In this document: piece after piece, positions 14,101 to 62,118 of the stretch | Position numbering within the stretch: the first letter of the stretch is position 1 | Layout: each line of letters starts with the position of its first letter | Assembly (NCBI RefSeq): GCF_016433145.1 | Contig: NC_058131.1 | Location: 347,099,076 to 347,163,075, forward strand | Reading direction: 5' to 3' | Origin: Gracilinanus agilis | Taxonomy: Eukaryota | Length of the DNA: 64,000 nucleotides | The notes under the pieces: generated by a model | The model's input: the letters and a program-made list of their open reading frames with translations, nothing else | Told to the model about the DNA's origin: nothing | Database searches by the model: none | Program-made: the position numbers and the translations under genes

Positions 14101-16029
14101 TATGCTTTTATTTAGATAAATTTAATGGCTAATTAGTATAGTGTGTTACTATTTTGGTAGTCATGCAATCTTTTGCCTGACCAGAGCTGCCATGAGAACT
14201 GAAGCCTTTTAAAGCAGCTGTTGAGGTTGTAGAAATCCTCTCTTTGAATTGGTCTTGGGGCCATTGATAAGTATATATAACAAGGTTGTCCATTGCATTT
14301 TCTATTTAATGACTATTATTATGAGCATATGTCTTCATCTAAAAATAAATATTTGTGGGGCATACCTTTATTTTTAATTGACTGCCCTACCCATTGAGTA
14401 AAAATAGTTTTTGATTCTGACTCAAAGTCCTTCAGCAACCTAGATGATACAGTGTCAGGTTTTCCAGGCAACAAAGTTGGAATGTTAGCTGTTGCCATTT
14501 TGAGCATTACTATGATGACGTCTATATAAATAATGAGTGTAGCCTAATTTTCTGACATGTGCTACTANNNNNNNNNNNNNNNNNNNNNNNNNNNNNNNNN
14601 NNNNNNNNNNNNNNNNNNNNNNNNNNNNNNNNNNNNNNNNNNNNNNNNNNNNNNNNNNNNNNNNNNNNNNNNNNNNNNNNNNNNNNNNNNNNNNNNNNNN
14701 NNNNNNNTCAATGCATTCCCAGATGACCTGCTTCCAGGATCTCTGAGGCAGATTGATAATTACTCCTATGCTACTTTTGCATTTAAACTTCATCTGGACT
14801 AAAAATTGTTTACATTTCAAAAAATAACACAAAGACTTAAAATATATCACTAATAGTAAATGCCTGAACTTTCAGCCACTACAAATTGACTTCCTTCTTA
14901 AAGGGGAAAAAAATCATCTTTCTTTTTTGTATGTTTAAAACTTTTTTTTTTATGTTGAAAAAGGAATATCTTCAGAAGCATTTAACTTTTGGGTGGGTTA
15001 GGGAGGAATAAAATGCTTCATTCTGTAAATTGACTGGGTTGTATATATGGGGAGTTTATTAGGAAAGGGCAGTGTATATTATTAGATTGCAGTTTTTAAT
15101 AATATTAAAAGTATTCCTGTGTTATACTGAAAATCTACTTAAACTGGATCCTAATTTTTGATGCATATCAGACTGATTAACTGAATTTAACTATTTCCTA
15201 TCTTGGTCCTAGACGTGAACACACACAAAAAATATATGTAAATTCAGTATTACATCCTGATATGTAACAATTAACAATGTCCAGAAAATTGAGATTAAAA
15301 TTATGATTATGCATTTAGATAGTAGCAGAATATTTCGTACATTGTTTTCTCAAGGGAAAATGAAATCAGCTTAATTATGGGCTTCCCCCCCCCCCATATC
15401 TTAAAAGAATAGACAAAAGTGCTATGGTTGGGTGAAGTTAAATATGTAGGACAATATTTAGTGGGGGGTTTTGTATATCATATATTTAATGATGCTTAAA
15501 CTGCATTCTTAATTCTTCAGTTAATTTTAATGGCCAGTTTTGATACTGTATTTCTTTGTTACACAGTTCAGGCTTACTAATTGTATGTATAAGTTGGTCT
15601 AAATTTGACTAGATAAATTCACTTTTGAATCTATCCTAGAATATAAGTTAATAGTGCCAATTATAAAGACTTGAAACAAAAACTCAATTTCCCTTGCTAC
15701 TTAAAGTATCAGCCAGTAGAGGACCTCATAACCATTTCTTTATTGGCATAGGAAGTTCTTCTCTCAATCATGGGCTACTTTAAGTAGAAGGAGTGAGACT
15801 TCATTTAAAGACAGCTTTGTAATAGCAAGTAGAAGTGTAGGGTTTGGAGAGAATGTTGATTTCCTTTAGGAAAAATATTTTAAAAGGTTTATTCATAAGT
15901 GTCTTGGTACATGACAGTGACTTGTAGCACAGAAATTTTATAAGGTGATAATTAAAGTAAAATAACGCCAAAGAAAGGGAAATAAATACTTTTTAAATTT
16001 GCAAAATAAATGTAATCTTTTCTTTGCAG

Positions 16030-16224
16030 GAGAAAAAAAAGCAAGAGTAGAAGTCGAAGTCATGACCGAAAGAGGAGCAAAAGTAAGGAACGGAAACGAA
16101 GCAGAGACCGGGAGAGGAAAAAGAGCAAAAGCCGTGAACGGAAACGTAGCCGAAGCAAAGAACGAAGACGAAGTCGTTCTAGAAGTAGAGAACGCCGTTT
16201 CAGAGGCCGATATCGAAGTCCCTA
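16030..16224 (+). CDS. RBM39: RBM39 exon 4, RS domain
   Basis: 195 nt, RKKSKSRSRSHDRKRSKSKE...RFRGRYRSP; AG/GT boundaries. Confidence 0.97.
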
Positions 16225-19389: not shown

Positions 19390-21591
19390 GTAGCTGTTGT
19401 CCCTATTTCTTATCTTCTCACAAGCTTTCAGCTTTACTAAAACTTAGCCAATTTATGCTACTGAAAAAAATGAATCATGTTTAAGTAATTTGGTATACAT
19501 AATACCTTGCTGTTTTTGCAAATTTATTCTTATAACCCATATTTACTAAGATCCAAAGTCCTATCAAGTTGTTGACAGCTTTTATTTTTCCTTTTATAAA
19601 TATTATGCAACTAAAAAGGGCCAAAATTATACTGTGCTAATGGTGTATTGAAAACAAAACTTTCCCTTCAAAGTCCCTATTACAATAGCAATGCTATTGG
19701 TATGTGTTAATTCTGTATTGTAAAAATTATTTGTTCAAATTTATTATTGCATCTAGCTTTAAAGAGACACAGGAGATAGAGTCAGACCACTCATATTTGT
19801 TTTCCTAGACCCGATATTTTCCTAAATGATTCTTTGCTGCTGTAAAATAAGAAGTATCAGACTTCATCAGACCAACTGTCCATCCAACCTAGTGTTGTCC
19901 GTCCATGACATCCTCAGAAAGTTAAGGTGTTTTATTCCCTTCTCCCATACCCTCCACCCTGAAAAAAAAATCCACAAAATTTTCTTTGCTTCACTGAAAA
20001 ATCTATTAGACATTTGTCATTTATGAATTTCTCCATGCCCTTATTGGGATTTATATTTACACTATGACTTGTTGCAACAAGTTATAGAAGATTTACCCAT
20101 AAAGTAGTACTTTACTTTGAACTACTGTATAACTTTATTCAAATTTAAATGTATATTGTATAGTTCTGTGATTTGCCAGAAAAGCTTTTACCTTATTATG
20201 CCCTTCATGGTATTATCTACATATTTTAGTTATATTTACATAAGGAAATTCCTCTAATCCCTGTGTCCTGCTAGTTATTTTCTGGATCTTCTCCAGCTCT
20301 GCTAGTTCTTTGTCTTGTTTGAGTTGCAGTTATTAGAATTACATAGAGCTTTTCAAGGGTGAATGCTGGATACAGGGACTGATTTTTGGTAAAAAGGGCA
20401 GGCATTCACGTTTTCTGCTTTGTTTCCAGTATGAATCTTGATGATGCCTGGTATTTTGTTGGCCCTTTTAGTCACAAGAGTACATTTTGATTGTTAACTT
20501 CTGGGAAATACCTATAGTGGCTCTTGAGCCCTTTCATTTGTTAATAGCTCAGAGTCCATTTCAGTCATTCCTCACCTATACTTTGTGTATATCACTTTTC
20601 TTCCCATTTAAGCAGCTTTTATGCTCTAAGCTTATGCTTTCCACTGTGGTTTTTACAACTATCTAAAAAAGAATTTAGTTTAATTTTCAAGTTTAGTATG
20701 AAACCTTTTAATGTTATATTGTCCTTGAAGGAGACTCACTGTTAGCACATAGAAATGCCCATTTATTTCTAAATATTACTTCCTTATGTCGATAATGGTT
20801 AATCCATGACACATTATTTTAATTTCAGAGAGATCCATTAGTTTTGCTTTGGTTCTTTGGTGGTAGAATTAACCAGGTTTTAGAATAGGACATTGACAAA
20901 GTTTCCTAAAAGCCTGAATACACTACAGTACTCTCCTTCCACGTCTTATTTTATTCCAAGAATTTTAGTTATGAAAATTGAGGAGCTTTCCCATTTTCAA
21001 AGGGTGGTTGAAATGTCAATTTAGTGAAGTATAATAGAAGAAAGCTTGAACTTCTAATTATATATGGTAAAACTACTGAATTTTCATTGAACACCCCAAC
21101 CCCCTTTTACATTTGAATTGCTTTGATGAGCTTGCAGATCATATTGATAGTATTTGGGGAAGGTAGGCTGTGATGATTTGCTTAAGTGGGGAGCCATTAT
21201 AATATACTAGGAGTCAAGGCTATGTTCCTTGGATGATGCTGAAAAATTACTTAGGGGAGGTTTTGTTGTTGTGTAACTTGATTTATGTAGCTGATCTCTT
21301 TATGGAGATACTTAGAGATACATAAAACTAAAAAATAATGATTTCAAATTTCCCATTCTGAAATAGACAATGGGGCAATAGTGGAAAGAGCACTGGATTG
21401 GGAATTTGGAGTCCTGGATTTTTGTGGTCCTAGTTTTGCCACTAATTTGGGCAAATTATTTCACCATTTTACCTTTTGTAAATTTAGTGACTGTCAGACT
21501 TATCCTAAAGGTTCTTTCCTATACATTCTAAAAGTTTATTAACCTTGTGATTAGAAATTAAGCGAGTTATTAACTTGGATTCTCCCTTCAG

Positions 21592-21709
21592 GGAACCTAT
21601 CGACAACCTTACTCCAGAAGAGAGAGATGCCAGGACTGTGTTCTGCATGCAGCTGGCAGCAAGAATTAGACCAAGAGATTTGGAGGAGTTTTTTTCTACC
21701 GTAGGAAAG
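21592..21709 (+). CDS. RBM39: RBM39 exon 7, start of RRM1
   Basis: EPIDNLTPEERDARTVFCMQLAAR...STVGK; 118 nt. Confidence 0.97.
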
Positions 21710-22922
21710 GTAATTGTCTTGTTTATTTATGGCAGATAAATTGGTAGTGAGGATGCATAAGAGGAAAAGGTATTGAAAGGGGTGGAGGGGTGAAGGAAGA
21801 AATATTTTGGGTACTTTAGTAATGTGTATATATATTAAAATATTTTTTAAATATTCGTGTCAAACTTGTTTGAAACCATATTTCCCCATCATAATACCTA
21901 TAATGGAAGGAATATATAATTTGAGGTCGGAGTTACAGATCCTAACTGACATTTATTTCTTTTTGATTTTTGGCAAGTAACCTTATTTGCTAATCTTGAG
22001 TTTTCTCATATGTTAATCTAAAAAACATTTGAGAATTAATAGTACTAAACTGACACACAAATGTTCAATAACTGAAAAATGGAAAGAGTTGGAAATGAAC
22101 CTTTTGTTGGAAATTTTTTGAGATTATAAATGTTTTTTTATTTGTGATTGAGAAGATTGAGGTTGTAAAAAAGGGGGGGCATATACTTGATTTTAAGGCA
22201 ACAAAATGTTTTGATTTTTTTTTTTCCATATAAACAATGCTTTAAAACCTAGGTATTCTTACCTTTTGGGGGGGTTTGGTTTGGTTCCTTTCTGATCTTG
22301 TATATGTTATTTTAAAATAATTGTGAGAAGCATTTTATAGGCTTCCTCAGGATGCCAAAGAGATTCAGAGTGCTAAGAAAACCTTACAAGAAAGCCATTA
22401 TAGGATTATTTGTTGAAACCAAATTATCAAAGCACATTGTTCATGATCTCACTGTTAGGACATGAAAAGAGTCCTTTGTAATAAATCAACAAACATTTCT
22501 TAGGCACTGTGCACTCTTTAGTATGGAGCAAATGAGAACTGATTAAGTTTAAGAGATGCAGGAGAGCTTTTACCTTAGGCCTCCCTTGCTACTAAATAGC
22601 CTTTATTTTATTTAATTAGAAAATTTTTCCATGGTTACATGATTCATGTTCTTTCCCTCTCTCTCCTCCCCATCTCCCTCCTGGAGCTGACTGAGCAATT
22701 CCACTGGGTTTTTACATGTATCATTGTTCAAAACCTAAATAGACTTTATTTTTCTTCACTTGGGTAACTACTCTTTTCATCCCAGCTAAAATAAACTCTT
22801 TACAGATGTTTGCAAATTAAATATAGTTTTCTTCTAAGATAGAAAATGGGATGCCTTTTTCTTTCCAAGTATAAGTGTACAGAATTTTTACTAATTACAC
22901 TGTTTATTAAAACCTACTTTTC

Positions 22923-23128
22923 GGGGGGGGGGCGCTGGGTGGCTATGTGGATTGAGAGTCAGGGCCAGAGATGGGAGGTCTTGGGTTTAAATGTGGCCTC
23001 AGCACTTCCTAGCTTTGTGACCCTGGGCAAATTACTTAACCCCCATTGCCTAGTCCTTACCACTCTTCTGCCTTAGAACACAATATTTGATTCTAAAGCA
23101 GATGGTAAGGGTTTAACAAAACAAAACA
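22923..23128 (+). mobile_element. SINE directly upstream of the RBM39 exon 8 acceptor
   Basis: Full body with (AAAAC)n tail; 14-bp TSD AAAAC(C/T)TACTTTTC at 22909-22922 and 23129-23142. Confidence 0.9.
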
Positions 23129-23162: not shown

Positions 23163-23315
23163 GTCCGTGATGTAAGGATGATTTCTGATAGAAATTCCAG
23201 AAGATCCAAAGGAATTGCTTATGTAGAGTTTGTTGATGTTAGCTCAGTGCCTCTAGCAATAGGATTAACTGGCCAGCGTGTCTTAGGAGTGCCTATCATT
23301 GTACAGGCCTCACAG
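23163..23315 (+). CDS. RBM39: RBM39 exon 8, RRM1
   Basis: VRDVRMISDRNSRRSKGIAYVEF...IIVQASQ; 153 nt. Confidence 0.97.
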
Positions 23316-24237
23316 GTAATTTTCTGGTTATAGATTTTTTTAGTAAATTCCCTTTTTATCCTGATATGGCCTGTTTATAGTTTTTCTCTATTACCCATTG
23401 CAGAAACACAATACATAGTAGGTAGGTTTTTAAATTTTTTCATCTCATGTTTGAGGTTGGGAATTTGTAGAAATTTTAACATTATTGTATTTAACCTTTT
23501 GTGTACAATCTATGAAGCTTTAGAAATTCTATTTAGGTGATAAGAATACGGGCATGTTTTATTGCCCATCTTTTATTAAAAAATGTTAGTGTTAGTGGGC
23601 TAAATTGCTAATTTCTATTTTGCCTGAAAATCTATTTTAATACATTGAATTTTCTCCATTTCATAAAGATAGGATTTTTTTATAAGTGACTTTATACCTG
23701 CTATTTGAGATTATTATCCATGGCAAAATAACTTGTCAGTTGAAGGTTTTGGCTTAGAATTGATTTTTTGGATTTTTTTTAGGAAAGTCAGAGAAGGTAA
23801 TAAATATTTATAAAGTAGCTCCTGGCAAAGCATTGTGCTAAGTTATGCTTTACAAATATCTCTTTTCATTTAGCTCTAATTAAAGTGTATATATTTTCAA
23901 ACTTTTCTTCTTAGTAAGTTATAGTTTGGGGTCCCCGAATCAAAAGGACTAGGATCAGTAGTAGAAACTTCATCATCAATGGTCAAATAAGGTTTTATAT
24001 ATACAAAAAGATGATCTAATAATTAACTTTGTCTCCTGTACATGGTGGGTTCTTAGACAAATAAAATTTAGATGAATAGGCATGCATGTTAAGGAAATGC
24101 CACTTAACAATTTTGGAATCATCTCTGGTTTGAAATATAGCGGAAAATGTTCGGTTTTTACATGTTATGGTTTTTGGTGCTTTTTAAAAGCCTCTAATCA
24201 TTGTTTAATGGTCATTTTTTCTTTTTTTTATGTGTAG

Positions 24238-24375
24238 GCAGAAAAGAATAGAGCAGCAGCAATGGCAAATAACCTACAAAAAGGAAGTGCTGGACCTATG
24301 AGACTTTATGTAGGATCATTACACTTTAACATAACTGAAGATATGCTTCGGGGAATCTTTGAGCCTTTTGGCAGG
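24238..24375 (+). CDS. RBM39: RBM39 exon 9, start of RRM2
   Basis: AEKNRAAAM...RLYVGSLHFNITEDMLRGIFEPFGR; 138 nt. Confidence 0.97.
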
Positions 24376-25361
24376 GTGAGTCCTGAAATTCTTGATCTTT
24401 CAAATGTTAAGTGAATAACCTAATCTGAACCCTTATCCCTAAGGACCTGATGTATATTTACTGATTTAATCATTTAGGATGAAATTATAATGGTCTCAGA
24501 GAATAGAAAGTTTATGGTACTGTTCATGAATAAAGCTTATTTATTTTGAATTTAAATTCTCTCCAGCCTCTCCCCACCCATTGAGAAGACAAGTAATATG
24601 ATATCCATTATTTATATGAAGTCATGCAAATGTCAGTCTATATTAGGGTCTTTTCCCCCCTCTTCCCCCCCCCCAAAAAAAAAGGGTGGGCTGGGAAGAA
24701 AAATAAAAGTATAAAAACAACATGCTTCAATCTGCACTTGAGTTCATTGGTTCTCTCTGAAGGTGAATAGCATTTTTTTCATCTTGAGTTCCTTGGAATT
24801 ATGATCATTGTATCACTCAGTCATTCACAGTAGAGCATAATTTATATTGTTTCTATTACTGTATACAGTGTTCTAGTTCAGCTTACTTTACTTTTCTTTG
24901 GTTTTGTAATGTGTTTTTTTCTGAACCCTGTTCCACATCTCTTACAGCAGAATTAATTTACATTTCTCTTAATTATTTATGATTTAGGGCATCTTTTTTG
25001 TGAGATATAACTTTTTTCCTGAAGATTGTCTTTTCATATTTTTTTTACCATTCATCACTTGACAGAATGACTTTTTGATTCACCTCACTTAGATTTTTGA
25101 GAGATTAAACCTTTATCAAAGAAACTTGATAATCTTTTTAACAAATATGAATCTGATTAATAGAAGCTTTGGAGTTAGCAATTGAAATGAATTGTGTCTT
25201 TCCTTCTAAACATCTGTTTAAGAAATTCCTTTTGTTACAAAATGGAGATAATGCTATTACATTAAAATTTGCAGAATCATAATGTAGAAATTTTGCATAT
25301 GTTTGCTATACATTTTTAAGCTAATAATGTATAGTAATTTATCTTAGTTGATTCTAGTTCC

Positions 25362-25568
25362 TTTTTTTTTTTTTTTAAACCCCATACCTTCCATTTAGAA
25401 GCAATACTGTGTTTTGATTCCAAGGCAGAAGAGAGTGGTATGGGCTAGGCAATGGGGTTAAGTGATTTGTAGTGTCACACATCTCTAATTGTCTGAGACC
25501 AGATTTGAGCTTAGGACCTTCCATCTCTAGGCCTGGCTCCCAGTCTACTGAGCTACCCAGCTGTCTCC
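25362..25568 (-). mobile_element. SINE (MAR1/SINE1-type)
   Basis: Poly-T start; TSD TCTAGTTCC at 25353-25361 and 25569-25577. Confidence 0.85.
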
Positions 25569-25815
25569 TCTAGTTCCATTTTTTTGAAGTATTGAACAAA
25601 ATTTTTTAATCTCTTTGGCTAGATTTGTATACCAGTTTTTTAGGTGATTGAAATGTATTAGAGATTTCTGAAGGTTGAGTAGACATAAATGTTTCTTTGA
25701 AAAATTTTAAAATACCTATTTAACATCAGCCTTATTCCTTCTTTATACAAATTTTTGAGCTCAACACTAATTTTTGTTCATACTTGTAATGGTTAATTTT
25801 CTAAATTGATTTCAG

Positions 25816-25881
25816 ATCGAAAGCATTCAGCTGATGATGGATAGTGAAACTGGTCGATCCAAAGGATATGGATTTATTACA
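25816..25881 (+). CDS. RBM39: RBM39 exon 10: IESIQLMMDSETGRSKGYGFIT
   Basis: 66 nt; contains RNP1 KGYGFITF. Confidence 0.97.
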
Positions 25882-27619
25882 GTAAGCATTGGCCAATATC
25901 AGGGTCTAAAATTGATGTGTTATTTTAGAGAAAAGCCCAATTACCAATTGATTGTACAGTAGGAGAAAATTCCATCTGAATATTTAATATTTTCTAATGT
26001 TGAGTTAAATTTTTTGAATATAATTTCATTTCTTCCCAAGAAGATGTTAAAGGAGCCTAGCATAAACTGTTTTTGTCTTTGTGTTATTGTCACTTAGTCC
26101 AATGTCTACACATAAGTATTTAGTACATTTGTGTAGATTAATCAATAGTAGGCTTTAAATAAATGTTAGTTGAATTGCTAGTTGGGGAATATATGAGTAC
26201 ATTAAAATGAATAGAGATCGTTTACAAAGAATATAAAAAGTTACAATGTACAGGTTTTGTCTTAGTCTTTTCTAGGCATAAAGTTTAGATCAATTCTTAG
26301 GGAGTTTAGTATGTAAGGTCTTTTTTTAGTAGAGTTGGAAAGAGTGGTGGATTTGGAAACAGGATCTGGATTGGACTTGAATCCTGGCTTTGCCATTTAA
26401 GTGGGTGTCCTTGGCACAAGCAATTTGACCTCCTTGGTCTTCATTTTCTTCATCTGTAAAACGAGTGTATTGAATAGTTGTCTCTATATGGTCCCTTTCC
26501 TACTCTAAATCCATGATTTCTGGTTTTAAACATTCTTCCTACAATTTTGACTATTTCTTTCATTTACTTAGCAAACCTTTTTAATCGTCAATCTTGTTGT
26601 AAAGTTCATTCCAGCTTTCCTGAGTTATAACAAAATCTGATTTTGAAGTGAATGCTTTATTTACTTTGATCTCAATTTTTTGTCTGGCTCCATAGCCAGG
26701 GAAAAGATTTACTTAACAATGACTGCCTGCAGAGTCCTAAATGAAAATGAAGTATCATTAGATTAAGTATAACTGATCACAGCATGCATACATGCATAAT
26801 TTTTCTAATAATTAGGGTAATGAGAATTTTTCAGAATGACTAATTTATCTATTTTATTCCTCCTGTCCCCAAATAGAATGTGTGAACTTGGACTTAATAG
26901 TCCAATCTTGACAATTATACCGTTTTTATTGAGAACTAGTTTAAATATCTACTCAATGGCAGTGTATCATTTACAAAAGAAAATTTAGGCTCAAAAAGGT
27001 AAATTGACTTGCCTAAAATTGTTAGCTTTTTCATGTTTTAAATGTTTAATGTTTTAATGTATTACAGGGTTCATATTACAAATGTGTTCTGAGTTAAATT
27101 CATAAGCTTAACTTAACTTTAAGTTAAATAGATTTGAATGCATTTGTGAATACATTCATGTACAACTACATCATTCCACAAATTTAAGTATCCATAACAT
27201 TTTTGTTACAAGTTGTTTTAGACAAGGAAATAGCCTTGAAGTTAAATATCATTAATGGTTTATGTCCAATAAGGAGTTTACTTGTGACAACTTACTCTTA
27301 TCTTACACTCCTATAAAAATAGGAAACAAAAGATTTACACCACTCATCCACTGATGAAAAAGATCTGCTAGGCAGAAGGAAAGGGTGGTGGTGCGTTTGT
27401 GACAACACTTCTCTTTCCTCAATTAAATTCCATTCTTACTATTGCAGTTTGCTTTTTTTTTTTTTTACCATTGAGATAATACTGAGGCTGGGTGTCAACT
27501 CATTTTTTTTTTCTCTAGGTCCTGCAGGCTAGAAATGTGATTCAGTTCTAACAAAATTCCAATACGACAAAAGAATTTGGATGTTTTGTGGAGTTGAATA
27601 TAAGGAGATTTTACTTGTA

Positions 27620-28762: not shown

Positions 28763-28967
28763 TTTTCAGATTCAGAGTGTGCCAAAAAGGCATTAGAACA
28801 ACTGAATGGATTTGAATTAGCAGGAAGGCCTATGAAAGTTGGTCATGTTACTGAACGTACTGATGCTTCCAGTGCCAGTTCATTTTTGGATAGTGATGAG
28901 CTGGAACGGACTGGAATTGACTTGGGAACAACTGGTCGTCTCCAATTAATGGCAAGACTTGCAGAAG
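28763..28967 (+). CDS. RBM39: RBM39 exon 11
   Basis: FSDSECAKKALEQLNGFELAGRPMKVGHV...LMARLAE; 205 nt. Confidence 0.97.
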
Positions 28968-30025
28968 GTAAGTTTCTTGTAAGAATCTAAAAGATTTTAG
29001 AAGTTTTTTAAATTTATCATCAAATTTAATGTCCATTCCTTCCAGTCCTTCTTGACTGGGGTATCACCTATTAATGAGGAAGTATTTGTTGGAATTTGCC
29101 AAGTTCTGGCACTGTTGTAGGAAACTAAAGCATATAAAAACGGACTCTTTATCACAGATTATTGACCCTATCCCATGGTAGAGGAAAATGGCATCGATTG
29201 TTTTAAATAATTATCATGTATATAATCATTCTAAGTGAGCTAGATCATGAATTGGTCATTAAGTTGTCTTCGGTTCTTGAATTTTTTTTTTTGCGAGATA
29301 TCAATAATGTTTATTTTGTAAAAGTGTGAATATCCATGTGAAGCAAAGAGAAAACCTAATCTTAGCTGCTCGATCTGTTGTAAGACCATAATTATAGTGT
29401 TTTTGAGGAAAAGGGGGTGTTTTGGGAGGTAAAAAAGTGAAAGAAGGATAAGGAAATGCCCAAACAGATGTTGCTTGACTTAGATCACAGTTATTAGTTA
29501 AATCTAGTGACAATATAATGGTGAGAACCGGCTGAGGCTAACTGGGTCAGCTCAATGATTTGTAGGTATGTTTCATTCTTCTGGGGTCAGTGAAGCACTT
29601 CCTCCAGGGTTGCCATTGTGTCAGAGGCATTGCTTCCCCATTCTATTCAATGGTAATTGAATTCCTCTTCCTTCTGTATATGAGTTAAAACACTCCTGCA
29701 CTCTTCCCCCTCCCATTGAATTCTTAATGGAACATCTTAGTGATAAAGTCTATCTTAACTTGTCTTTGCTACTGTATAAAAAAACACCTTGGGCTTTGTA
29801 TTGAGAAATAGTTGCTCTAGTAGAAAAAGGACCTTCTAATTTTGTAATACAGATGGACTCTAAACTCTTTATCTTTTGATAGTATTTAACCTTAAAGTCA
29901 CTTAAAAGCTTTTTTACTCATAAGAAAATAACAGTTACACTGTTTCCTCATAAGGGAATATCAGCTACACTTCTTTTTTTCTTAAGACAATGTTAATATT
30001 AAAATGTTACCTGCTTCTTTTATAG

Positions 30026-30103
30026 GTACAGGTTTACAGATTCCTCCAGCAGCACAACAAGCTCTGCAAATGAGTGGATCTTTAGCATTTGGAGCTGTAG
30101 CAG
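30026..30103 (+). CDS. RBM39: RBM39 exon 12: TGLQIPPAAQQALQMSGSLAFGAVA
   Basis: 78 nt; AG/GT boundaries. Confidence 0.97.
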
Positions 30104-32278
30104 GTAGGAATTAAATCTCATCTTGTTTTTTAGTTCTTGAGTTTCCGCTAATTCAGTTGCATCATTATTTGTCTAGATATTTTTGGTTGAATGTTTTCAA
30201 ATGGTTAGCTTTCACTTATTTTCCTGCTGATTTGTCTTTCTTTATGCTTTAACTACCTCTCTGAGCCCTAATAGGAAGTGCCATTATTATTAACATAAGG
30301 AAGTAGAATGGACTTTAAAATAAACTTATATTTTGTTGTAATTAATGCAGGCTTTTTTTTAATAGTGGACTTAACTAAAGTTTTTCATGGGTGGAGTCTA
30401 TATTCGTCTTTATCTCTCATTTTTAATAGTAGTTAGTCAGGGATAGGGCCTAGTACCAAAAAGGCAGGAGTTCTTATAGTTGATATCCATTAATCAATTC
30501 TACCTACATTTAGTTCTACCCTGAAAATTTAAATCAACCCCCACATTCACCAAGCTGTCATGCAATACACCATCATATTTAAAGTTAGAAAGTGAACATG
30601 TAGGATAGCTAGTCTGATTCCCATACCTCTCCCTCCCCATTTTACAATTGAAGAAACTTGAGGCCAAGTCATTAAGTAATTTTGCCAAATTTGAACCCAG
30701 GTCTTTCAAATATTCATATTCTTTTCTACTGTTCCATACAAGTTCTTCATACCTGAAACACTTGTGTTGATTTAAACTGATTCATCACTTTAGCTTGAAA
30801 CCCTTTGTTTGTTGTTTTAAGGTGTTTTGTTTTTTCTATTAAAAATGTCTTAAATGTGTAGTATTTTTACTAAGGAGTAACACTATAAGTATTGTTTACA
30901 TATATTAAGGCTAGAGTTCAACTAACCATCTTGAAGCTTGGGTAAAATCACAAATAAGAATTCTTCACCAGTCACATAATATGGATGGGATGTGATCTGT
31001 ACTAGTGAGGGGCGGGAGAGTATCACCAAATCCTTTGAGGGCATGGCCCTGTAAAGCCAGATGCTATATTTTTCTATTCTATTTGAAAATATTTTCAGTA
31101 TACAATAGTTGCTTAGTGAGCTAAAAGATAAAATATACCTACTTCCAAGATTCTTGACTTTCTTTTCTGAAGAATATTTTTCTTGCTAGAGAAAAGGGCA
31201 GCAAACTATTTATTTATATAGAAGTGATCAATTCAAGTTAGGCAAGTGACTTTTTAAAGAATAACTTTTATTGTGACTGGTTTTTAGTGTCTGATGTTTT
31301 AGTCTTTTTTACCAAGCCCATACCTGTTTCATAAAACATGTGTAGTCTTTGGGCTACTTACACAGGCCTGCCTCTTATGAATTCCCTCCACCTTCCTGTG
31401 GAATGAGTAGTTTGGGGACAACAGTTTACTATCCAGTAGAAAACTACAAAGTAGATTGAGAAAATTCTTACTCTCATTCGACAACATTCAGATGTCTACT
31501 TTTTGTGGCACTTTCTAGATGCTGAGCAAAGTACCTAGTCATAATCTCTGCTTTCTACTAATTTATGATTACTCAGGATACAGCAACCACCTCTTTAGTG
31601 ACTGTCACCACCTGGGCTAAGAATACCTGTAAGTGCCATGGCAAGCATATTTAGGGATAGGCTGGGTAAAGGTAAAAAAAAGAAAGGTCCCTCAGAGTCT
31701 CCATAGTAACCATTTAATGTTACCACTTGTAGACATTGTGTTTGAAAGGCACCAGTATTATTTTTTAATATACCAGGATCTATATTTTAAAGTTTTGGGG
31801 GGGGAAATGTTGGAGATGGAGTAGTAATCAATTATTCTGTGTACCATTATTTAGCTTTTCTCAGCTTGTCTAGTTTTTATTTTTATTCTTTTGGTACCCT
31901 TCCCCATGTCATCTGTAACTCTCCCTACCCACCCCCCAAAATTAGGAATTCCATGTTATTGAAGTGTATATGTGGGTGTGGGTTTGTGTGGGTGTTTAAA
32001 AGAATATTAAGAATCAGGAAAAAGATTGTGTAAGAGGCTTGTAATAGTGTAGTTACCCTAAACCATTAATTGAAATGGTGTTACCCACCTGGATATATAA
32101 AGACCTCCATATTTAATTTGGAATAGATAAAAAGAGGTTTTGCTATCAGCTCCTCTTTAAAGGATTTTAATATGTCTTGCTTTTGAATATCTGTTAATAT
32201 TTTCTTCAATTCATCCTATAACTTTTTGAGGTTCTCACTATTCTGCATTGAGCCAAAATCTTTTTCTTTCTTTTGTAG

Positions 32279-32311
32279 ATTTACAAACTAGACTTTCCCA
32301 ACAGAGTGAGG
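32279..32311 (+). CDS. RBM39: RBM39 exon 13, short form: DLQTRLSQQSE
   Basis: 33 nt; TAG acceptor, GAGG|GTAAGT donor. Confidence 0.95.
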
Positions 32312-34238
32312 GTAAGTTTTCAACTTTTTCAATCTCTATTTGCCTTATAAAATAGCTTGGCATAATTTTACTGTTATAAATAATTTGTAAAATAAAATAT
32401 CATCTTGACTGGCAACCTGGGTACCATGGCTTTGGGTGAATGAATGGTCCTTTTTTGATGGTGGTCCTTCTACCCTCTCTCCTACAGGAACCTTTTTCCA
32501 AGTGTCTAAAGGCCTGGTGGGTGAAAGGCCCTTTGACTTCAGGATAGGCTCTGCTCTGACTCCAGTGAGCCTCCAAGTAGTGTACAGCTGAGATGAGGTA
32601 TACCTCATCTTTGAGGCTAAACATAGTGAATTGCATAGGAATTCCTGGGTCTAACAGAAGATGCACCCCAGTCAGCTTTTTCTTCAATCTTCTTTTTGCC
32701 AATATTGTGAAGTTCAGTTATTCTCCTGAATTTTATTGTGATATCAATAAAATCAAGACTGGGTTTTTCATTCATTTCTTTTGACAGAAGCCATAATTTT
32801 TGTGATTCTGTGTTTTCAAGACATGTAAAGAAAAATCGTTGACTACTATTCATTCCATCCTATAAATTAAAAATAATTCTTTGTTCAGGATTCTTTATGC
32901 CCGAATATGTAATGGGCACTATTATGGTATGTTGTGGGCCAGTGATCTTACGATCCAGTCCATGATCTTATTGAATTAATGATTATAATAGTATACTGTG
33001 TTGAGAGAAATAAAGATCTGATATAGAATGACATACAAGAAAAGCAGTATATGAATTGGGGAAAGGATTCATCATCAATTGGTAAAAATAAGGAGGTCTT
33101 CTTATGCTGGGCTGTTAAGAATAGATAGAATTTCAGGAGCCAGAGGCATTTTGTTCCAGGTCTAAGGGAAAATGAGCTGAGAAATGGAACCTGGAAATCC
33201 AAATAAATCGTTTGGGATGAATTGTCTAATCTGGTGGAACTTTAAATAGTTGGAATAAAGGGTTGTATGTGAGAGCAGAGAGTCATAATAACATGGTATC
33301 TGTGAATTTGGTTTTCTTTTTATATTTACATAAATTTATATGTATATGTGTACATATACATATATATAACTTTCATTTTAATTTCCTTTGGACTTTTATG
33401 TGTTTTTAATTGTGTACATTTAAAAACATGTGATACCTAAATTTCAAAAAGGATTTCATGACACATAAAAATTAAAAACTCCTGATCTAAAGGTTCCATT
33501 GTGTAATAGATCTTTTTGGTGGTGTTCAAGACCAAATCAGAGTTGGTACTTTATTTAGTCAATAGTACAAAAAATCAAAAGGTTTTGAGCAGAAAAGTGG
33601 TTAAAAGCATTTTCTTTAATCTGCTTAGCACTATGAAGCCATCCAAATAGGTGGTGGGGGAGGTATAAATTAACTGGGGGAGAAAAGAAATAAAATTAGA
33701 CTGCCTTTGTTGGTTTTAGGCAGGTGGTTATGAGGAACCTGTATAGAATTAATAGCCGTACAAATAGGAGATGAGTTTGTAGAAATAGATGATGTCTATG
33801 TATTTCTTTTATAGTAAAGCTCATTTTTTAATTGAGCAAATTACTTGTTTAGGTTTAGTTTAGGAGCATTCTCTAACTTAGCCATCATTTTTTACCTTGA
33901 TGACCCCACACATAGTTAAGCCTTTTAGTGGTGGATCTTGCATTTAGGGAATGCTTTCCAATTGAGTTCTCCATATTTTCTTTTAATTTTTCTAGGTTGT
34001 TTATCTAGAAATTTTTTTTTTGACATTTCTGAAAATTTGAATCAAGTTTTGTTGTTGAAAGTAATATATGCTGGGCAAAAACTACAGATGTCTTTCATAA
34101 ATTGAATTGCTTTCTCCCCCTCCCCCCCAATTAAATATTGTAACTGGTTTAAGTGATTGATTAAAGTATGGTTGTATAATTGGTACTAGCTTACTGAATT
34201 TTTAAGGAAAGTTTTCTTGTCTTCTTTTTTCTCCATAG

Positions 34239-34320
34239 TTACAGCTCTAGCTGCAGCTGCTTCTGTTCAGCCTCTTGCAACACAGTGTTTCCAGCTTTCC
34301 AATATGTTTAACCCTCAAAC
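34239..34320 (+). CDS. RBM39: RBM39 exon 14, start of RRM3/UHM
   Basis: VTALAAAASVQPLATQCFQLSNMFNPQ; 82 nt. Confidence 0.96.
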
Positions 34321-34767
34321 GTAAGCAATGAATTTTTGTAAAATACATGTAAATCTAGCCTTTACTTTTGTGTAATTTGTTGGTCCTTGTTTATAATGTT
34401 TAAGAATCACATCTTTTACCAAATTTCAAAGCATGAAAAAGTATGTTCTACGAAAAAGATTTGTCATAAACCCTTAGCACAAAACCAAAGATTTGAATTT
34501 TAAAAGTGCTTTTTTTTTCCCCCTTTCCCTATGGTTAGTCTTTATATTACAAAATTACTTTTATTTCCTTTTGACTATAGTTAGGAAAAAAATTAGGAAG
34601 AGTATGGATTTGGGGTTTTTAACTGGTTACTATTAAATGCTTTCAATATAGTAGGTAAAGGGAAGAGGGATTTGTTGAGAAGAAATTGATTTATCCTAGG
34701 GAGAGAGAGGTACCTCTTTACAGTCCTTATTTTCATATAAATTATAATTTTGACCTGTCTTTTACAG

Positions 34768-34873
34768 GGAAGATGAACTTGGCTGGGATACAGAAATAAA
34801 GGATGATGTGATTGAAGAATGTAACAAACATGGAGGAGTCATTCATATTTATGTTGACAAAAATTCAGCTCAG
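34768..34873 (+). CDS. RBM39: RBM39 exon 15
   Basis: EDELGWDTEIKDDVIEECNKHGGVIHIYVDKNSAQ; 106 nt. Confidence 0.97.
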
Positions 34874-34957: not shown

Positions 34958-35184
34958 CTTTTTTTATTTTTTATAAAAAAATTTTTTAAACTTTTACCTT
35001 CCATCTTGGAGTTAATACTGTGTATTCGCTCCAAGGCAGAAGAGTGGTAAGGGCTAGGCAATGGGGCTTAAGTGACTTGCCCAGGGTCATACAGCTAGGA
35101 AGTGTCTAAGGCCACATTTGAACCTAGGACCTATAATCTCTAGATCTGGCTCTCAATCCACAGAGCCACCCAGCTGCCCCCCCC
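34958..35184 (-). mobile_element. SINE, older subfamily, first of a tandem pair
   Basis: Flanked by AAAAGACATTT at 34947-34957 and 35185-35195. Confidence 0.85.
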
Positions 35185-35197
35185 AAAAGACATTTTC

Positions 35198-35392
35198 TTT
35201 TTTTTTTTTAAACCCTTAACTTCTATGTATTGATTCCTTGGTAGAAGTGGTAGGTAAGGGTGGGCAATGGGGGTGAAGTGACTTGCCCACGGTCACACAG
35301 CAGCTGAGAAGTGTCTGAGGCCAGATTTGAACCTAGGACCTCCTGTCTCTAGGCCTGACTCTCAATCCACTGAGCTATCCAGCTGCCCCTGC
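35198..35392 (-). mobile_element. SINE1_Mdo-like, second of the tandem pair
   Basis: Flanked by AAAAGACATTTTC at 35185-35197 and 35393-35405. Confidence 0.85.
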
Positions 35393-36296
35393 AAAAGACA
35401 TTTTCAATGGCTGACCCCTACCTACTTCCATGTATTCTCTCATCATCTCTGCCTACTTCCTTGAAGTCCCAGCTAAAAGGAAGGTCTTTCTGAGTCTCTT
35501 TCATATTAGTGGTTTCTCTTCACTAATTACTTCAATTTATCCTATAATATGACATAGATTGCATAGGTTTTTTTTGCATGTTATCTCCTCTATTCAATTG
35601 TAAGCTTTAGAGAGCAAAGCCTCTTTTTGCATTTTTCTCTCTCAGCAGATTTTTCTAGCACCTAGCTTGATAAATGATTTGACAGACATTCTTGTTGGTG
35701 ATTGTTAGGATTCATGAGTTCTCCTAAATGTGTTCTCTCTCAAATGAGGTCCTCTTTATATAGATAACAGAGTTCACAAAGTGCTTTCTTTTCTACTGAA
35801 ATAATCTGACACTCAATTAGATTTTGAACTTTAAAGCAATGACAAATGAAGTAATAGGATATGATTATGTTGCAAACATAACCTTTGGAAATTACATACA
35901 AATTGATAGATTGACTTATCAGTTATAAAGAGCAATAGTGAAAAAGCAAAAAGTTACCTGCTGTGATGGGATTGGACCCTAGTCATCTTGCACACAGTAT
36001 TAAGTGCTTTTAATAAGGCTTTTTTTTTTTAAATGGAAAAAACAGTGCTTGACTTACATTTCTTTGGTGACAAGTTTTCCCTTCCTTTAAATAGTTGACT
36101 TGAAGCATTCTCTACCCTAACAAAGTATAAGAATTTAAATGAAAAGTTACTTCCTCATGTTTATGATTTATTCTTAATAAAATGAGTAAAAAGTAAAAAG
36201 CAAATATGTGCAGGACACAATTGGTTTCAGACTTGACATAATAAACTTATAGAGGGCCTGCATTCAATAATAATTATTGACTCTTTTCGGTTTCAG

Positions 36297-36375
36297 GGCA
36301 ATGTGTATGTTAAGTGCCCCTCAATTGCTGCAGCCATTGCAGCAGTAAATGCATTGCATGGAAGATGGTTTGCTG
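36297..36375 (+). CDS. RBM39: RBM39 exon 16: GNVYVKCPSIAAAIAAVNALHGRWFA
   Basis: 79 nt; contains the UHM RWF motif. Confidence 0.97.
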
Positions 36376-36458
36376 GTAAGTATGGCCAAAAGTCTTCTAA
36401 TTTGTTAATATTAAAATGTTGAAAGGAAACAATACTAAAGATTTCTTTTCTTCAACAG

Positions 36459-36559
36459 GTAAAATGATTACAGCTGCATATGTACCTCTTCCAACTTATC
36501 ACAACCTCTTCCCTGATTCCATGACAGCAACACAACTACTGGTTCCCGTTAGACGATGA
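36459..36559 (+). CDS. RBM39: RBM39 exon 17 CDS: KMITAAYVPLPTYHNLFPDSMTATQLLVPVRR*
   Basis: TGA at 36557-36559; summed CDS 1575 nt = 524 aa plus stop. Confidence 0.97.
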
Positions 36560-39500
36560 AGGAGGATTTAGTCCCTTATGTACATAGCTTTTTTTTTTTT
36601 TTTTTTTTTTTAAAGAGGATTCAAACCTGAGTTATCTTTTATTTAGGTAAAACAAAAGGAAAGGGTCTACTGTCATTTGTATGTGATTCCTGTTACCTTG
36701 CCAGAAGGAGAGAAAGATATGATAGCAGGAATGCAGTGTGCTCATTCTCCCTAACTAGCAATTTCCACCTTATACAAAGCTGTTTTCTTGTTCTGCCTTG
36801 TAAATGTACATTTAGAACATTGACTAAGGTGATCTGTAGGAATTGAGAAATAGCTTAGATAAATGTACTTTTCTGTAAAAGGCAGACAAGGATGTAATGA
36901 TGTTTTTAATGTTTCAGAAGCCTAACTTTTTATGCAGCAGTTACATTTTACATTTCACTAAATGAATTTTGACACTTGGCTAATGGTTTAACAGAAATAT
37001 GGTTTCTGGAATACGTATTTAGTGTTCTGTATATGGGAAATTCAAAGACAACTAAATGAGTCCTGGCTTTAGTCAGTAATTCACCTTGCATTATGATAAA
37101 CAATTGGCAAGAAAGGGAGATTCAAAGATTCAATTTCTTGATGGTAACTTTTCAATTAATGTATCTGTAAAAGTTTCTTTGTAAATACTGTGTGTTCTGG
37201 TGTGTCTAAGGTTCCAAACAAAATGATCCCTGCATTTCCTCAAATGTACAGATAAGTGTGGTAAGCAACACAGNNNNNNNNNNNNNNNNNNNNNNNNNNN
37301 NNNNNNNNNNNNNNNNNNNNNNNNNNNNNNNNNNNNNNNNNNNNNNNNNNNNNNNNNNNNNNNNNNNNNNNNNNNNNNNNNNNNNNNNNNNNNNNNNNNN
37401 NNNNNNNNNNNNNNNNNNNNNNNNNNNNNNNNNNNNNNNNNNNNNNNNNNNNNNNNNNNNNNNNNNNNNNNTTTAAAAGGCTGTGAGCAATTTTATTTGT
37501 ATTTTCTAATTGTCAAAAACAGATACAGTATGGTATCTATGAAGTTTCTTTTATCAAATCATTGTGGTACAGTTGGGGGGAAACTACATCTGGAACCAGA
37601 GAACCTGGGTTCAAATCCTAGTTAAGCCACTTTCCATTTGGAGATTAGTTTCCATATCTGTAAAATAAGGGGCACTAAATTTAGAAGACCCTCTGGATTC
37701 ACTTTCATTTCTGAATTCCATGATCCTTTGTGACCAAATTGGTGAACAATGGAAATCTGAGTTCTACAAAAGACCGTTATTAAATATTTGCTTATCTAGC
37801 CCTTTTTTAAAAAAGTATTTTACTTTCCCAATTGCATATAATAATTTCCAACATATTTTTTGAGATTTTAAGATTCAAATATTCCTTCCCTCTCCCCTCC
37901 TGGAGAATGGTAAGCAATTTTATCTGTAGCCTACCTTTAAAGGCAATTTTTCCTATCTAGATTGATTTTTCTCTGTGCAAACTTTGGAAAAAAATCTTCC
38001 ATGCTTCCTGATCAAGACTTATCGTTAGTGTCTTAATTTGATATCTTGTGATCGAAGTACTAGTATCACAGGAGTTATGTGCTAGAGACCCTTTATAACA
38101 GGTGAAAAACCTGCAGTTACGGCGTTGTTTATATTTTGAGGCTTTATAAACCCTTTCCACTCTTCTATAAATCTTAATCCACTTATTAACCTACAGTCAC
38201 CGAGCTAATCAGATAGGATGCAGAACAGCACTGTTTGGTGGCTTTCATTCCATAAATGTAAACTGATTCAGAATTATATATATATTACATATATATGTGA
38301 TTAATGAGGGACAACTGTATATTCATTTTTTCCCTGATGATCTAATTGGACATTTTAACTCACATAATTATGCAACGGAATGGAATTTACCCAGATCTCA
38401 CTGGAGTCCAAGACTTGCCCTTGTCCACAGTCTCAATATACCTATTTAACTTGGCAGTTCTAACACCTATTTGTGGTGGCTATCTGACCAGGTAAACTTT
38501 CATTCTACCTGTTATTCTCAGATCAGAAAAGGTTTCCTGTTATATCTAAGAACTTTATAAAAAATGCTGTTCTTAACACAAAACATGGATACCAAAGGCA
38601 GTTGTGAGAGTAAAGTAAAAATTGTCAAAGTTGTAGGTAAACAAGCATAATGCACACTGCTTTGGTGAGTTGGGAATTATTTCATGTAGATATCCTCTTC
38701 AGGGTTATGTTTTGTTTGTTGATTAACAAATAAAAAAATCCTTAGATTTTTATTACATTACCATGAGAAACATTTGGTTTTGACTAGGAATTTTGGTTGA
38801 AGCAGAGCAGGACTAAAGTAATTTTTAAAGGAAGTAGCAATGTTTATTATGGTGCATTTATTAATAACAAGCAGTTTGGATTTAGGTTATACATGTCAAC
38901 AGCCTTTTTCTCAAGGGAGCTGATGAACATAAACTAATGGCTTGTATAAGTTTTTTTAAGAACCCTGCATTTCATTTATGAGACTACAATAGTACCTATC
39001 AGCAAAACTTGGCCCAAATATAAGTAATTAAGAGAAAGGAGGGGCTGCTTCCAGAGTTCAAAAAGTTCACAGGAGAGCAGATTTACATGTTAGCTTCATG
39101 ACAATATCTCCTTTTGGAGGATTTAAAAGTCTCAAGCAGGACTCTCATGAATCTGTCATAAATCTCTAAAAAAATGCTTGTAAAGCAGCTATCTCCACTT
39201 GTCCAGCCATCTCACTTTTAGTATTTTTCAGTCTATACAACTTTCTCTAAAAACTTTTTCTCTTTGGACTAATAATTTCTGATACTCATTCTTAAGATCT
39301 TTAAATTATCCTTGACTTGCCCACCACTTCCAGTTACCAAAAATGGGGCTCCTTTTTAAATATGTTCATCTTAGAACTGCTAAATTAAAGATGTTTACAG
39401 CATTTGAAATGAAGCAAAAAAAATAGTCAAGCAGGTTCAGATATTTCAGTCTCTTGATGAAAAAATGCTGTTAAATTACATGCAAACTTACTCATTCAGA

Positions 39501-40414: not shown

Positions 40415-40523
40415 TTAGCAGCGAATGCCCATTCCGATGGCCATAAATGTTCCGAAGGTACCCCCGCTCTGCATCATGGTTTTGCCAATTCCGCCCATCA
40501 GCTCCCGGCCCCGCATCCCGATC
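40415..40523 (-). CDS. ROMO1: ROMO1 last coding exon: [35 protein letters not shown]
   Basis: CAG acceptor; TAA at 40417-40415; 109 nt. Confidence 0.97.
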
Positions 40524-40805
40524 CTGGAGGATGAAGCTTTAATGGAGATATGTGGAGACAGGCTCCAGGACATGAGGCCCGTCACCATCCCCCCACTCCC
40601 GGCCCAGGTGCCTCCTCCCTAGGGAATTCAATTCGCCCCTTAACGCCAGGCTGCGGCCACTCCAGGCCCAGCCACCTCCCTCCCGGCGCCGACCGGCTGC
40701 CGGCCTCTTTCCTCCCGCCACTCCCCTAACTCTCGTTGCCCCCAGCGTAGGTGCGTGCCGAGGGTCGAAGATCGAGCCCGGGCCGATCTCGAAGGTTGCT
40801 CTCAC

Positions 40806-40936
40806 CTGAGGCACGAGAAGGTACCGAACAGCGCCCCAGCCGCCATGCCCACGGCGCAGCCCATCACGAAGCCCATCTTCACCCGGTCGAAGCAGCTGGG
40901 CTGGGACTGACCATAGGGACCCACGGCCACTGGCAT
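40806..40936 (-). CDS. ROMO1: ROMO1 first coding exon: [43 protein letters not shown]
   Basis: ATG directly after the CAG acceptor; GTGAG donor; 131+109 = 240 nt = 79 aa, matching human ROMO1 as recalled. Confidence 0.97.
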
Positions 40937-53449: not shown

Positions 53450-53658
53450 GCTTTTTTTAGTTTTTTTTTTATTTTTTTATTTTAAACCCTTAACTTCTGT
53501 GTATTGACTTATAGGTGGAAGATTGGTAAGGGTAGGCAATGGGGGTCAAGTGACTTGCCCAGGGTCACACGGCTGGGAAGTGTCTGAGGCCGGATTTGAA
53601 CCTAGGACCTCCTGTCTCTAGGCCTGGCTCTCAATCCACTGAGCTACCCAGCTGCCCC
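53450..53658 (-). mobile_element. Young SINE1_Mdo-like element
   Basis: TSD TCATGAAGCC at 53440-53449 and 53659-53668. Confidence 0.9.
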
Positions 53659-54036
53659 TCATGAAGCCCTTTTATAAACATCATTTGACTTTAAGCACAG
53701 ACATAATATGGAGTCATTGATCTTAGCTTTCCTTCATATTCTAAGACTCTAAAAATTTAAAAACAAAATGGTATGTGTTCAAGGGGTGATTTCCATAAGA
53801 AAATGAGGTAACCATTGGCTAAGTGGATTTTTTTTCCTATTCTTTCTCACTTTTGTTCAAGAACATTAACAGCCAAGGAAGCTGAGGCTTTGATTAGCAG
53901 AATGTTGGTGAAGAACTACTGGCCTGAAGACTGGTGTGTGCTTTTTCCAGATTTTCTGTGAGATCCAAAGTGCAAGGGTCATACTGCCATGGGGTATGTG
54001 AACAACCCACCATGTATTCTATTGCTGTCTCTTTAG

Positions 54037-58344: not shown

Positions 58345-58535
58345 GGCAGCTTGGTAGCTCAGTGGATTGAGAGCCAGACCTAGAGACAAGAGGTCCTGCC
58401 TTCAAATCTGTCCTTAGACCCTTTCTAGCTGTGTAACCATGAGCAAATCACTTAATCCCCATTGCCTAGGCCTTACTGTTCTATTGCCTTAGAATACACT
58501 ATTGATTCTAGGATGGGAGGTAAGGGCCTTTAATT
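58345..58535 (+). mobile_element. SINE
   Basis: GGGCAGCTTGGTAGCTCAGTGGATTGAG start through GGTAAGGG. Confidence 0.8.
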
Positions 58536-62050: not shown

Positions 62051-62118
62051 TGAATGCTCTATTATTGCCCTCACTCATCAAATGTCTCTGTCTCTGTCTC
62101 TGTCTCTCTCATTGATAG

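What the first reader, a model, noticed from the sequence alone, without database searches (positions are those of the whole stretch)
32356..32780. Hidden exon in RBM39 intron 13 predicting a UHM-less isoform or poison exon
Seen: a 130-nt stretch with no AG (32356-32485) ends in GGTCCTTCTACCCTCTCTCCTACAG|G at 32487/32488, the hallmark of a real acceptor. In phase with exon 13 it encodes GTFFQVSKGLVGERPFDFRIGSALTPVSLQVVYS* (TGA 32589-32591). AATAAA at 32746-32751 with a T-rich downstream tract suggests a terminal exon, giving a 436-aa protein with RS, RRM1 and RRM2 but no RRM3/UHM. Donors at 32516 (CTG|GTGGGT) or 32597 (GAG|GTATAC) would instead make PTC cassettes. A second AATAAA lies at 32391-32396. 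Established: the UHM binds ULMs of SF3B1 and U2AF2. Inference: an NMD-escaping, possibly dominant-negative isoform, or a second autoregulatory switch that I do not recall being described.
Basis: partly seen in the sequence, partly recalled or inferred. Interest (0 to 1): 0.75.

Follow-up and report, generated by a model that had tools for sequence, protein, structure and literature searches.

The report
Unproven cryptic exon in RBM39 intron
A very good-looking splice acceptor, a short open frame and a poly(A) signal do lie in an RBM39 intron, but I could get no evidence that cells use them, so this is most likely an unused or noise-level pseudo-exon.

Summary
The window carries RBM39 on the + strand. 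The 33-nt exon 32279-32311 is followed by a 1.9-kb intron. That intron holds a 130-nt AG-free zone, a 15/16 pyrimidine tract, CAG|G at 32487/32488, 34 in-frame codons ending in TGA, and AATAAA at 32746.

The acceptor is the only AG on either strand of the 64 kb that combines such a tract with an AG-free zone of 100 nt or more. The other features are ordinary:
- 11% of intronic AGs open 33 or more codons.
- 28% of positions have an AATAAA 150-400 nt downstream.

The decisive test, junction reads, could not be run.

Small runs that the tool guesses to be RNA (9 studies) hold the stretch. They hold as many words as the genome-sized runs of the same organism. This fits unspliced intron rather than an exon-limited signal.

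The tail has no relatives among 33-105-aa proteins and no Pfam match. The acceptor lacks the weak, UUUG-type signature of RBM39's known autoregulated poison exon.

Best reading: a cryptic pseudo-exon. A low-level alternative terminal exon remains possible. Conservation could not be tested.

The parts
32279..32311 (+). It encodes (D)LQTRLSQQSE plus the first base of the next codon. The donor AGG|GTAAGT starts at 32312.
   Evidence: translation and flanking tag|A ... G|gtaagt. The neighbouring RBM39 exons were placed by stop-to-stop ORFs.
32312..32487 (+). Putative 176-nt mini-intron between the exon 13 donor and the candidate acceptor. It contains AATAAA at 32391-32396.
   Evidence: This is inference only; no junction evidence was obtained.
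32356..32485 (+). AG-free zone of 130 nt upstream of the candidate acceptor.
   Evidence: the previous AG ends at 32355. About nine N-free runs of 100 nt or more exist on the + strand of the window.
32463..32487 (+). Polypyrimidine tract (15 of 16 pyrimidines at -20..-5) and the acceptor CAG, followed by G at +1.
   Evidence: this is the only AG on either strand with at least 13/16 pyrimidines, a pyrimidine at -3 and an AG-free zone of at least 100 nt.
32488..32591 (+). Candidate exon body: 34 in-frame codons (GTFFQ...VVYS), then TGA at 32589-32591.
   Evidence: One search gives the translation. There is no Pfam match and no word-sharing protein of 33-105 aa. Of intronic AGs, 10.7% give an open frame this long.
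32514..32522 (+). Candidate donor CTG|GTGGGT. It would make a 29-nt cassette.
   Evidence: consensus match by eye only.
32591..32610 (+). Perfect 20-nt palindrome. It starts at the last base of the TGA and buries the weak candidate donor GAG|GTATAC (32597/8).
   Evidence: (self reverse-complement match, 100% over 20 nt).
32746..32795 (+). AATAAA hexamer with a U-rich tract downstream. This is a possible poly(A) site near 32770. No UGUA lies upstream.
   Evidence: The hexamer density is 1.33 per kb, so it carries little weight on its own.
34244..34320 (+).

Best explanation
The stretch is a cryptic pseudo-exon in the 1.9-kb RBM39 intron that follows the 33-nt DLQTRLSQQSE exon. It has a canonical, U2AF-type acceptor: a long pyrimidine tract, CAG|G and a long AG-free zone. 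That acceptor is not partnered by a good donor.

Under exon definition such a site is normally ignored. Exon 13 then splices to the exon at about 34244, and any use of 32488 is noise-level. The 34-codon frame and the AATAAA at 32746 are what AT-rich intron sequence gives by chance.

Shown: the sequence features, how rare or common each is in the window, the absence of relatives for the peptide (among 33-105-aa proteins), and the absence of the RBM39-dependent 3' splice-site signature.

Inferred: that the site is not used productively.
For: - Of 18 + strand acceptor-like sites passing at least 14/16 pyrimidines and an AG-free zone of at least 30 nt, five are real exons and 12 of the other 13 (all but the candidate) match none of the coding exons I placed by ORF, so strong decoys are common here.
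- The open frame is ordinary (10.7% of intronic AGs), and so is the AATAAA (28% of positions). No UGUA lies upstream.
- The donors are weak or badly placed. One gives a 29-nt exon. The other, GAG|GTATAC, lies inside a perfect 20-nt palindrome.
- Runs guessed to be RNA hold exactly as many sampled words of 32312-32850 (40-41 of 57) as the genome-sized runs of the same organism. Their contigs therefore run through the acceptor and past the poly(A) signal, as unspliced intron does.
- No protein of 33-105 aa shares words with the tail, and there is no Pfam domain.
- The literature searched describes only exon 2b/3 as the RBM39 poison exon and reports no event in this intron.
Against: - The acceptor is unusually good. 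It is unique in 64 kb on both strands for the combination of tract and AG-free zone.
- It lies only 176 nt from a perfect donor in a highly expressed gene, so some use is likely.
- A hexamer with a U-rich downstream tract could define a terminal exon without any donor.
- Absence of use was not shown. No reads could be laid.
- The protein searches could not see products longer than 105 aa.
- The RNA label of the runs is the tool's guess.
Confidence: 0.55

Rival explanations
1. The stretch is a real, lineage-specific alternative terminal exon made by intronic polyadenylation. Exon 13 splices to 32488 and the transcript ends near 32770. The mRNA would escape NMD and encode RBM39 with the RS domain, RRM1 and RRM2 plus a 34-aa tail, but without the UHM.
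For: The acceptor is strong and canonical with a long AG-free zone. The stop lies in what would be the last exon. AATAAA at 32746 has a U-rich downstream tract. The stretch is present in small assemblies guessed to be RNA from 9 studies.
Against: Those assemblies cover the flanks as well, so they do not outline an exon. There is no UGUA, and the hexamer is common. The poly(A) signal lies 435 nt from a consensus 5' splice site; from established knowledge, U1 suppresses such signals at that range. The tail has no relatives. No junction or 3'-end evidence was obtained.
Confidence: 0.25
2. The stretch is a second poison cassette exon, 32488-32516 or 32488-32597. It would introduce a premature stop and send the mRNA to NMD, possibly under RBM39's own control.
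For: An in-frame TGA lies at 32589. The 29-nt version would shift the frame. The donor CTG|GTGGGT is a fair match. YCUUUG motifs occur at 32530 and 32608.
Against: The known RBM39-dependent exon needs a weak 3' splice site with CUCUUUG abutting the AG. A strong pyrimidine tract abolished the dependence, and here the tract is the strong type. The 110-nt version has a poor donor inside a palindrome. YCUUUG occurs 75 times on the + strand of the window. The stretch was not stopped by the reads tool's filter, whose notice says it is no evidence of anything; this is a very weak hint only.
Confidence: 0.08
3. The stretch is a decoy acceptor. It engages U2AF and U2 without productive splicing and so slows removal of this intron (intron detention), lowering RBM39 output.
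For: It is a strong acceptor without a usable donor. Assemblies guessed to be RNA contain the unspliced 5' part of the intron in 9 studies. From my own knowledge, decoy exons have been described in retained introns of other splicing-factor genes.
Against: There was no control intron to show that this one is retained more than others. The RNA label is a guess. Conservation was not tested. No experiment bears on it.
Confidence: 0.07

Closest known systems
RBM39 poison exon 2b (also numbered exon 3), the autoregulatory NMD switch (PMC10477243; PMC6547761)
   Same: It is in the same gene. It is also an extra exon with an in-frame stop that lies between constitutive exons.
   Different: Exon 2b is 98.6% identical between human and Xenopus. 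It has a weak, non-canonical 3' splice site with an RRM2 site (CUCUUUG) directly before the AG. It is a cassette shown to respond to UPF1 and RBM39 knock-down. The candidate has a strong canonical tract, no abutting UUUG motif, no good donor, unknown conservation and no expression evidence.
Skipped terminal exons made by intronic polyadenylation, giving C-terminally truncated proteins
   Same: The layout is the same: an intronic acceptor, a short new coding tail, a stop, and AAUAAA with a U-rich downstream element.
   Different: Membership needs junction reads and 3' ends, and neither could be obtained. Such sites are typically found in long 5' introns. This one is in a 1.9-kb 3' intron, 435 nt from a consensus donor.
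RBM39 deltaRRM3 construct (aa 1-445) of PMC10477243, and the paralogue RBM23/CAPER-beta
   Same: The predicted product would keep the RS domain, RRM1 and RRM2 and lose the UHM, like the engineered deltaRRM3. From my own memory, not checked here, CAPER-beta was also described as lacking the third RRM.
   Different: DeltaRRM3 partially rescued splicing rather than acting as a dominant negative. The natural isoform is hypothetical and would end about 40 residues earlier, with an unrelated 34-aa tail.
Intronic pseudo-exons and cryptic splice sites
   Same: It is a good acceptor-like site inside an intron, with no matching donor, no coding signal and no relatives.
   Different: The acceptor is at the very top of the window's distribution, which is why it deserves one real junction test.

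Membership tests
Alternative terminal exon (intronic polyadenylation isoform) | Consensus 3' splice site: branch-point window, pyrimidine tract and YAG | tested here: met
   15/16 pyrimidines, CAG|G and a 130-nt AG-free zone. The combination is unique in the window.
Alternative terminal exon (intronic polyadenylation isoform) | Spliced reads joining the upstream donor (32311) to the acceptor (32488) | not testable with these tools
Alternative terminal exon (intronic polyadenylation isoform) | Poly(A) signal with auxiliary elements, and mapped 3' ends | tested here: inconclusive
   AATAAA at 32746 and a U-rich downstream tract are present, but no UGUA. The hexamer is common, at 1.33 per kb. No 3'-end data were available. 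Contigs guessed to be RNA appear to run past the site.
Poison (NMD) cassette exon of the RBM39 exon 2b type | In-frame premature stop or frameshift on inclusion | tested here: met
   TGA at 32589-32591 is in phase with exon 13.
Poison (NMD) cassette exon of the RBM39 exon 2b type | Usable 5' splice site closing the exon | tested here: inconclusive
   CTG|GTGGGT gives only a 29-nt exon. GAG|GTATAC is weak and lies inside a 20-nt palindrome.
Poison (NMD) cassette exon of the RBM39 exon 2b type | Weak 3' splice site with an RBM39 RRM2 site (CUCUUUG) abutting the AG, which makes inclusion RBM39-dependent | tested here: not met
   The sequence before the AG is CCCUCUCUCCUAC, a strong tract like the substitution that abolished RBM39 dependence in PMC10477243.
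Poison (NMD) cassette exon of the RBM39 exon 2b type | Deep conservation across vertebrates | not testable with these tools
   No vertebrate genome collection was on hand. Metagenome pattern scans found nothing. Exact look-ups of eight window ORFs found nothing on record.
Decoy exon promoting intron retention | The host intron is retained in mature RNA more than its neighbours | tested here: inconclusive
   Runs guessed to be RNA from 9 studies hold the whole 5' 540 nt of the intron. There was no control intron, and the library type is unknown.
Exonised SINE | Sequence similarity to the window's abundant SINE family | tested here: not met
   A profile of nine copies finds about 20 significant copies in the window (E below 1e-5) but nothing in 31800-33400, even at E=100. 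Blastn of 32312-33000 against the window finds no other copy.
C/D box snoRNA (Rfam snoZ6) | Score at or above the family's gathering threshold, on the host gene's strand | tested here: not met
   The score is 22.5 bits against a gathering score of 35, with E=0.062 over 4 kb, and the match is on the minus strand.

The most novel reading that the evidence does not exclude
It would do so by splicing exon 13 to 32488 and polyadenylating near 32770. The product would be a natural counterpart of the deltaRRM3 protein that only partly supports splicing. Alternatively, the same acceptor works as a decoy that detains the intron. Either would be a second layer of RBM39 dosage control besides poison exon 2b.
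Probability: 0.1. Interest if true: 0.55.

Novelty: new member of a known kind. Interest (0 to 1): 0.25.

Why it matters
RBM39 is an essential splicing factor, and aryl-sulfonamide degraders target it. Its level is held by one known poison exon. A natural isoform without the UHM, or a second switch, would change how RBM39 dosage and SF3B1/U2AF2 contacts are thought to be controlled.

As it stands, the finding is a well-formed candidate with no evidence of use. One junction-level look at existing RNA-seq would settle it. If the junction is absent, the site is a textbook decoy acceptor of no further interest.

Tried and rejected

**Peptide relatives.**
- The word search with the 60-aa open frame 32409-32588 found no candidate. 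It sees only 33-105-aa proteins.
- Pfam found nothing.

**Handles to reach relatives' contigs.**
- A word search with the 100-aa minus-strand ORF 32403-32702 found nothing.
- Exact look-ups of eight window ORFs found nothing on record. One of them, the TTG-start ORF, was not a valid test, because a reference translates TTG as L.

**Full-length RBM39 proteins, wanted to fetch orthologous genes.**
- The representative search with the exon-11 frame returned genomic ORF fragments and fish or invertebrate proteins.
- The follow-up search with P0016 listed only fish.
- A look-up of P0001 gave two short metagenome contigs that stop before this intron. I did not use them further, because their organism is unknown.

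**Other searches.**
- Two metagenome pattern scans, one on the acceptor and one on exon 13 plus its donor, gave 0 hits.
- The idea that the exon is SINE or MIR-derived was rejected for the window's SINE family.
- A snoRNA reading was rejected.
- The literature gave no description of an event in this intron.

- I did not search the joined exon model (about 400 aa plus the tail), by the operators' rule.
- I did not use ROMO1 (40418-40933, minus strand) as a handle to fetch neighbouring loci. It would need a joined model, and its product looks identical to the human one from memory, so human contigs would probably be returned.
- I did not look up the other mammal-type exon-11 fragments (P0002, P0041, P0043, P0044), because their contigs might be human.

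Full report
**Locus.** The window carries RBM39 on the + strand. Stop-to-stop frames place the RS exon at about 16016-16222. The RRM1 exons lie at 21551-21736 and 23163-23330. The RRM2 exons lie at 24238-24411, 25810-25959 and 28763-28987. A linker exon sits at about 30025-30105. The 33-nt exon 32279-32311 encodes (D)LQTRLSQQSE. The next exon starts at about 34244, and the UHM exons lie at about 34767-34873 and around 36300-36556. ROMO1 lies on the minus strand at 40418-40933, and NFS1 follows on the + strand from about 42681. The intron in question therefore runs from 32312 to about 34243, roughly 1.9 kb. The candidate acceptor is 176 nt into it.

**The observation.**
- The donor AGG|GTAAGT is at 32311/32312.
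- No AG occurs between 32356 and 32485.
- The acceptor ...tctaccctctctcctacAG|G is at 32487/32488.
- The frame GTFFQVSKGLVGERPFDFRIGSALTPVSLQVVYS is in phase with the upstream exon and ends in TGA at 32589-32591.
- AATAAA stands at 32391 and 32746.
- The donor-like sites CTG|GTGGGT and GAG|GTATAC are present.
- I add one feature. 32591-32610 is a perfect 20-nt palindrome that begins at the last base of the stop codon and contains the second donor.

**How unusual is it?**
- The AG-free run alone is not special. The + strand has about nine N-free runs of 100 nt or more, including a 167-nt run further along the same intron that ends at a poor site.
- The combination is special. Among all AGs on both strands, this is the only one with at least 13 of 16 pyrimidines at -20..-5, a pyrimidine at -3 and at least 100 AG-free bases.
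- With looser cut-offs, 18 + strand sites pass. Five are real RBM39 or NFS1 exons and the rest are not known exons. A strong acceptor-like site in this window is therefore a decoy more often than an exon.
- The remaining features carry little weight. Of intronic AGs, 10.7% open 33 or more codons. AATAAA occurs 1.33 times per kb, and 28% of positions have one 150-400 nt downstream. No UGUA precedes the 32746 hexamer.

**Expression.** The one run search, on 32312-32850, listed 20 holders.
- Fourteen are small assemblies (40-336, one of 2056, million letters) from 9 studies. The tool guesses they are RNA; no listed run is recorded as RNA.
- All 14 hold 40 or 41 of the 57 sampled words. Three assemblies of about 3.1 billion letters from the same organism hold the same number. 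One assembly from another organism label holds all 57 and is probably the source of the window.
- My reading, which is inference: organism A differs from the window by about 1%. Its small assemblies contain every word its genome has. They therefore run through the mini-intron and past the poly(A) signal. That is what unspliced intron (or DNA) looks like, not an exon-shaped signal.
- This neither shows nor excludes use of the acceptor.

**Protein evidence.**
- The 60-aa open frame containing the tail shares no words with any 33-105-aa protein among 5.8 billion, and it matches no Pfam family.
- Longer products could not be searched, because the joined exon model was not mine to build.
- Attempts to reach other species' copies of the intron all failed. 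These were a word search with the overlapping minus-strand ORF, eight exact look-ups and two metagenome pattern scans.
- A route through full-length RBM39 proteins also failed, because it returned only fish and invertebrates.

**Other identities.** The stretch has no other copy in the window. It does not match a profile of the window's abundant SINE. Rfam gives only a sub-threshold snoZ6 match on the wrong strand.

**Comparison with what is known.**
- The only described RBM39 autoregulatory exon is exon 2b (also numbered exon 3). It is 98.6% identical between human and Xenopus (PMC6547761).
- Its RBM39 dependence rests on a weak 3' splice site with the RRM2 site CUCUUUG directly before the AG. 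Replacing this with a strong tract gave 100% inclusion, independent of RBM39 (PMC10477243).
- The candidate has the strong type of tract. If it is an exon, it is not built like the known switch.
- The same paper shows that RBM39 1-445, which lacks RRM3, partially rescues splicing. A product without the UHM would more likely be a hypomorph than a dominant negative.
- Searches for intronic polyadenylation or truncated isoforms of RBM39 found nothing on this intron.

**Verdict.**
- I put about 55% on a cryptic pseudo-exon with no or noise-level use.
- I put about 25% on a real but probably minor, lineage-specific terminal exon.
- A poison cassette and a decoy acceptor that detains the intron share most of the remaining 20%, at somewhat under 10% each.
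- One junction-level look at the runs already identified would decide between them.

Noticed in passing
window 9445-9696, 10533-10768, 14568-14707, 37274-37471: Four runs of N (140-252 nt) all lie inside the RBM39 gene. One sits where the known poison exon 2b would be expected, and one is in the 3' UTR region. They prevent a full recount of the protein length.
   Followed up: no
window 27489-27548: A second strong acceptor-like site, tttttttttctctag|GTCCTGCAGG, has 15/16 pyrimidines and a 30-nt AG-free zone. It lies in the intron between the RRM2 exons at 25810 and 28763 and matches no known exon.
   Followed up: no
window 32591-32610: A perfect 20-nt palindrome (agatgaggta/tacctcatct) starts at the last base of the candidate stop codon and contains the weak donor GAG|GTATAC. 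The sub-threshold Rfam snoZ6 match on the minus strand (32529-32616, 22.5 bits) overlaps it.
   Followed up: partly
window 35012-35218 and 35218-35475; also 2967-3224, 22841-23096, 25401-25653, 53492-53748, 58250-58502, 60321-60567, 61881-62137: An abundant SINE family of about 260 nt has roughly 20 significant copies in the 64 kb (E below 1e-5), including a head-to-tail pair in the RBM39 intron after the exon at 34767. Its translated frames read LAQGHTA...LNLGP.
   Followed up: partly
window 40418-40933 (minus strand) and 42681 onwards (plus strand): ROMO1 has two coding exons and runs convergent with RBM39. NFS1 runs divergent from ROMO1, around a CpG-rich stretch (GC 0.56 at 40-42 kb). From memory, this is the same gene order as in eutherians.
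   Followed up: no
window 33283-33449: A longer AG-free run (167 nt) lies in the same intron and ends at a poor site (aaatttcaaaaAG|G). It shows that AG-free runs alone do not mark acceptors here.
   Followed up: yes
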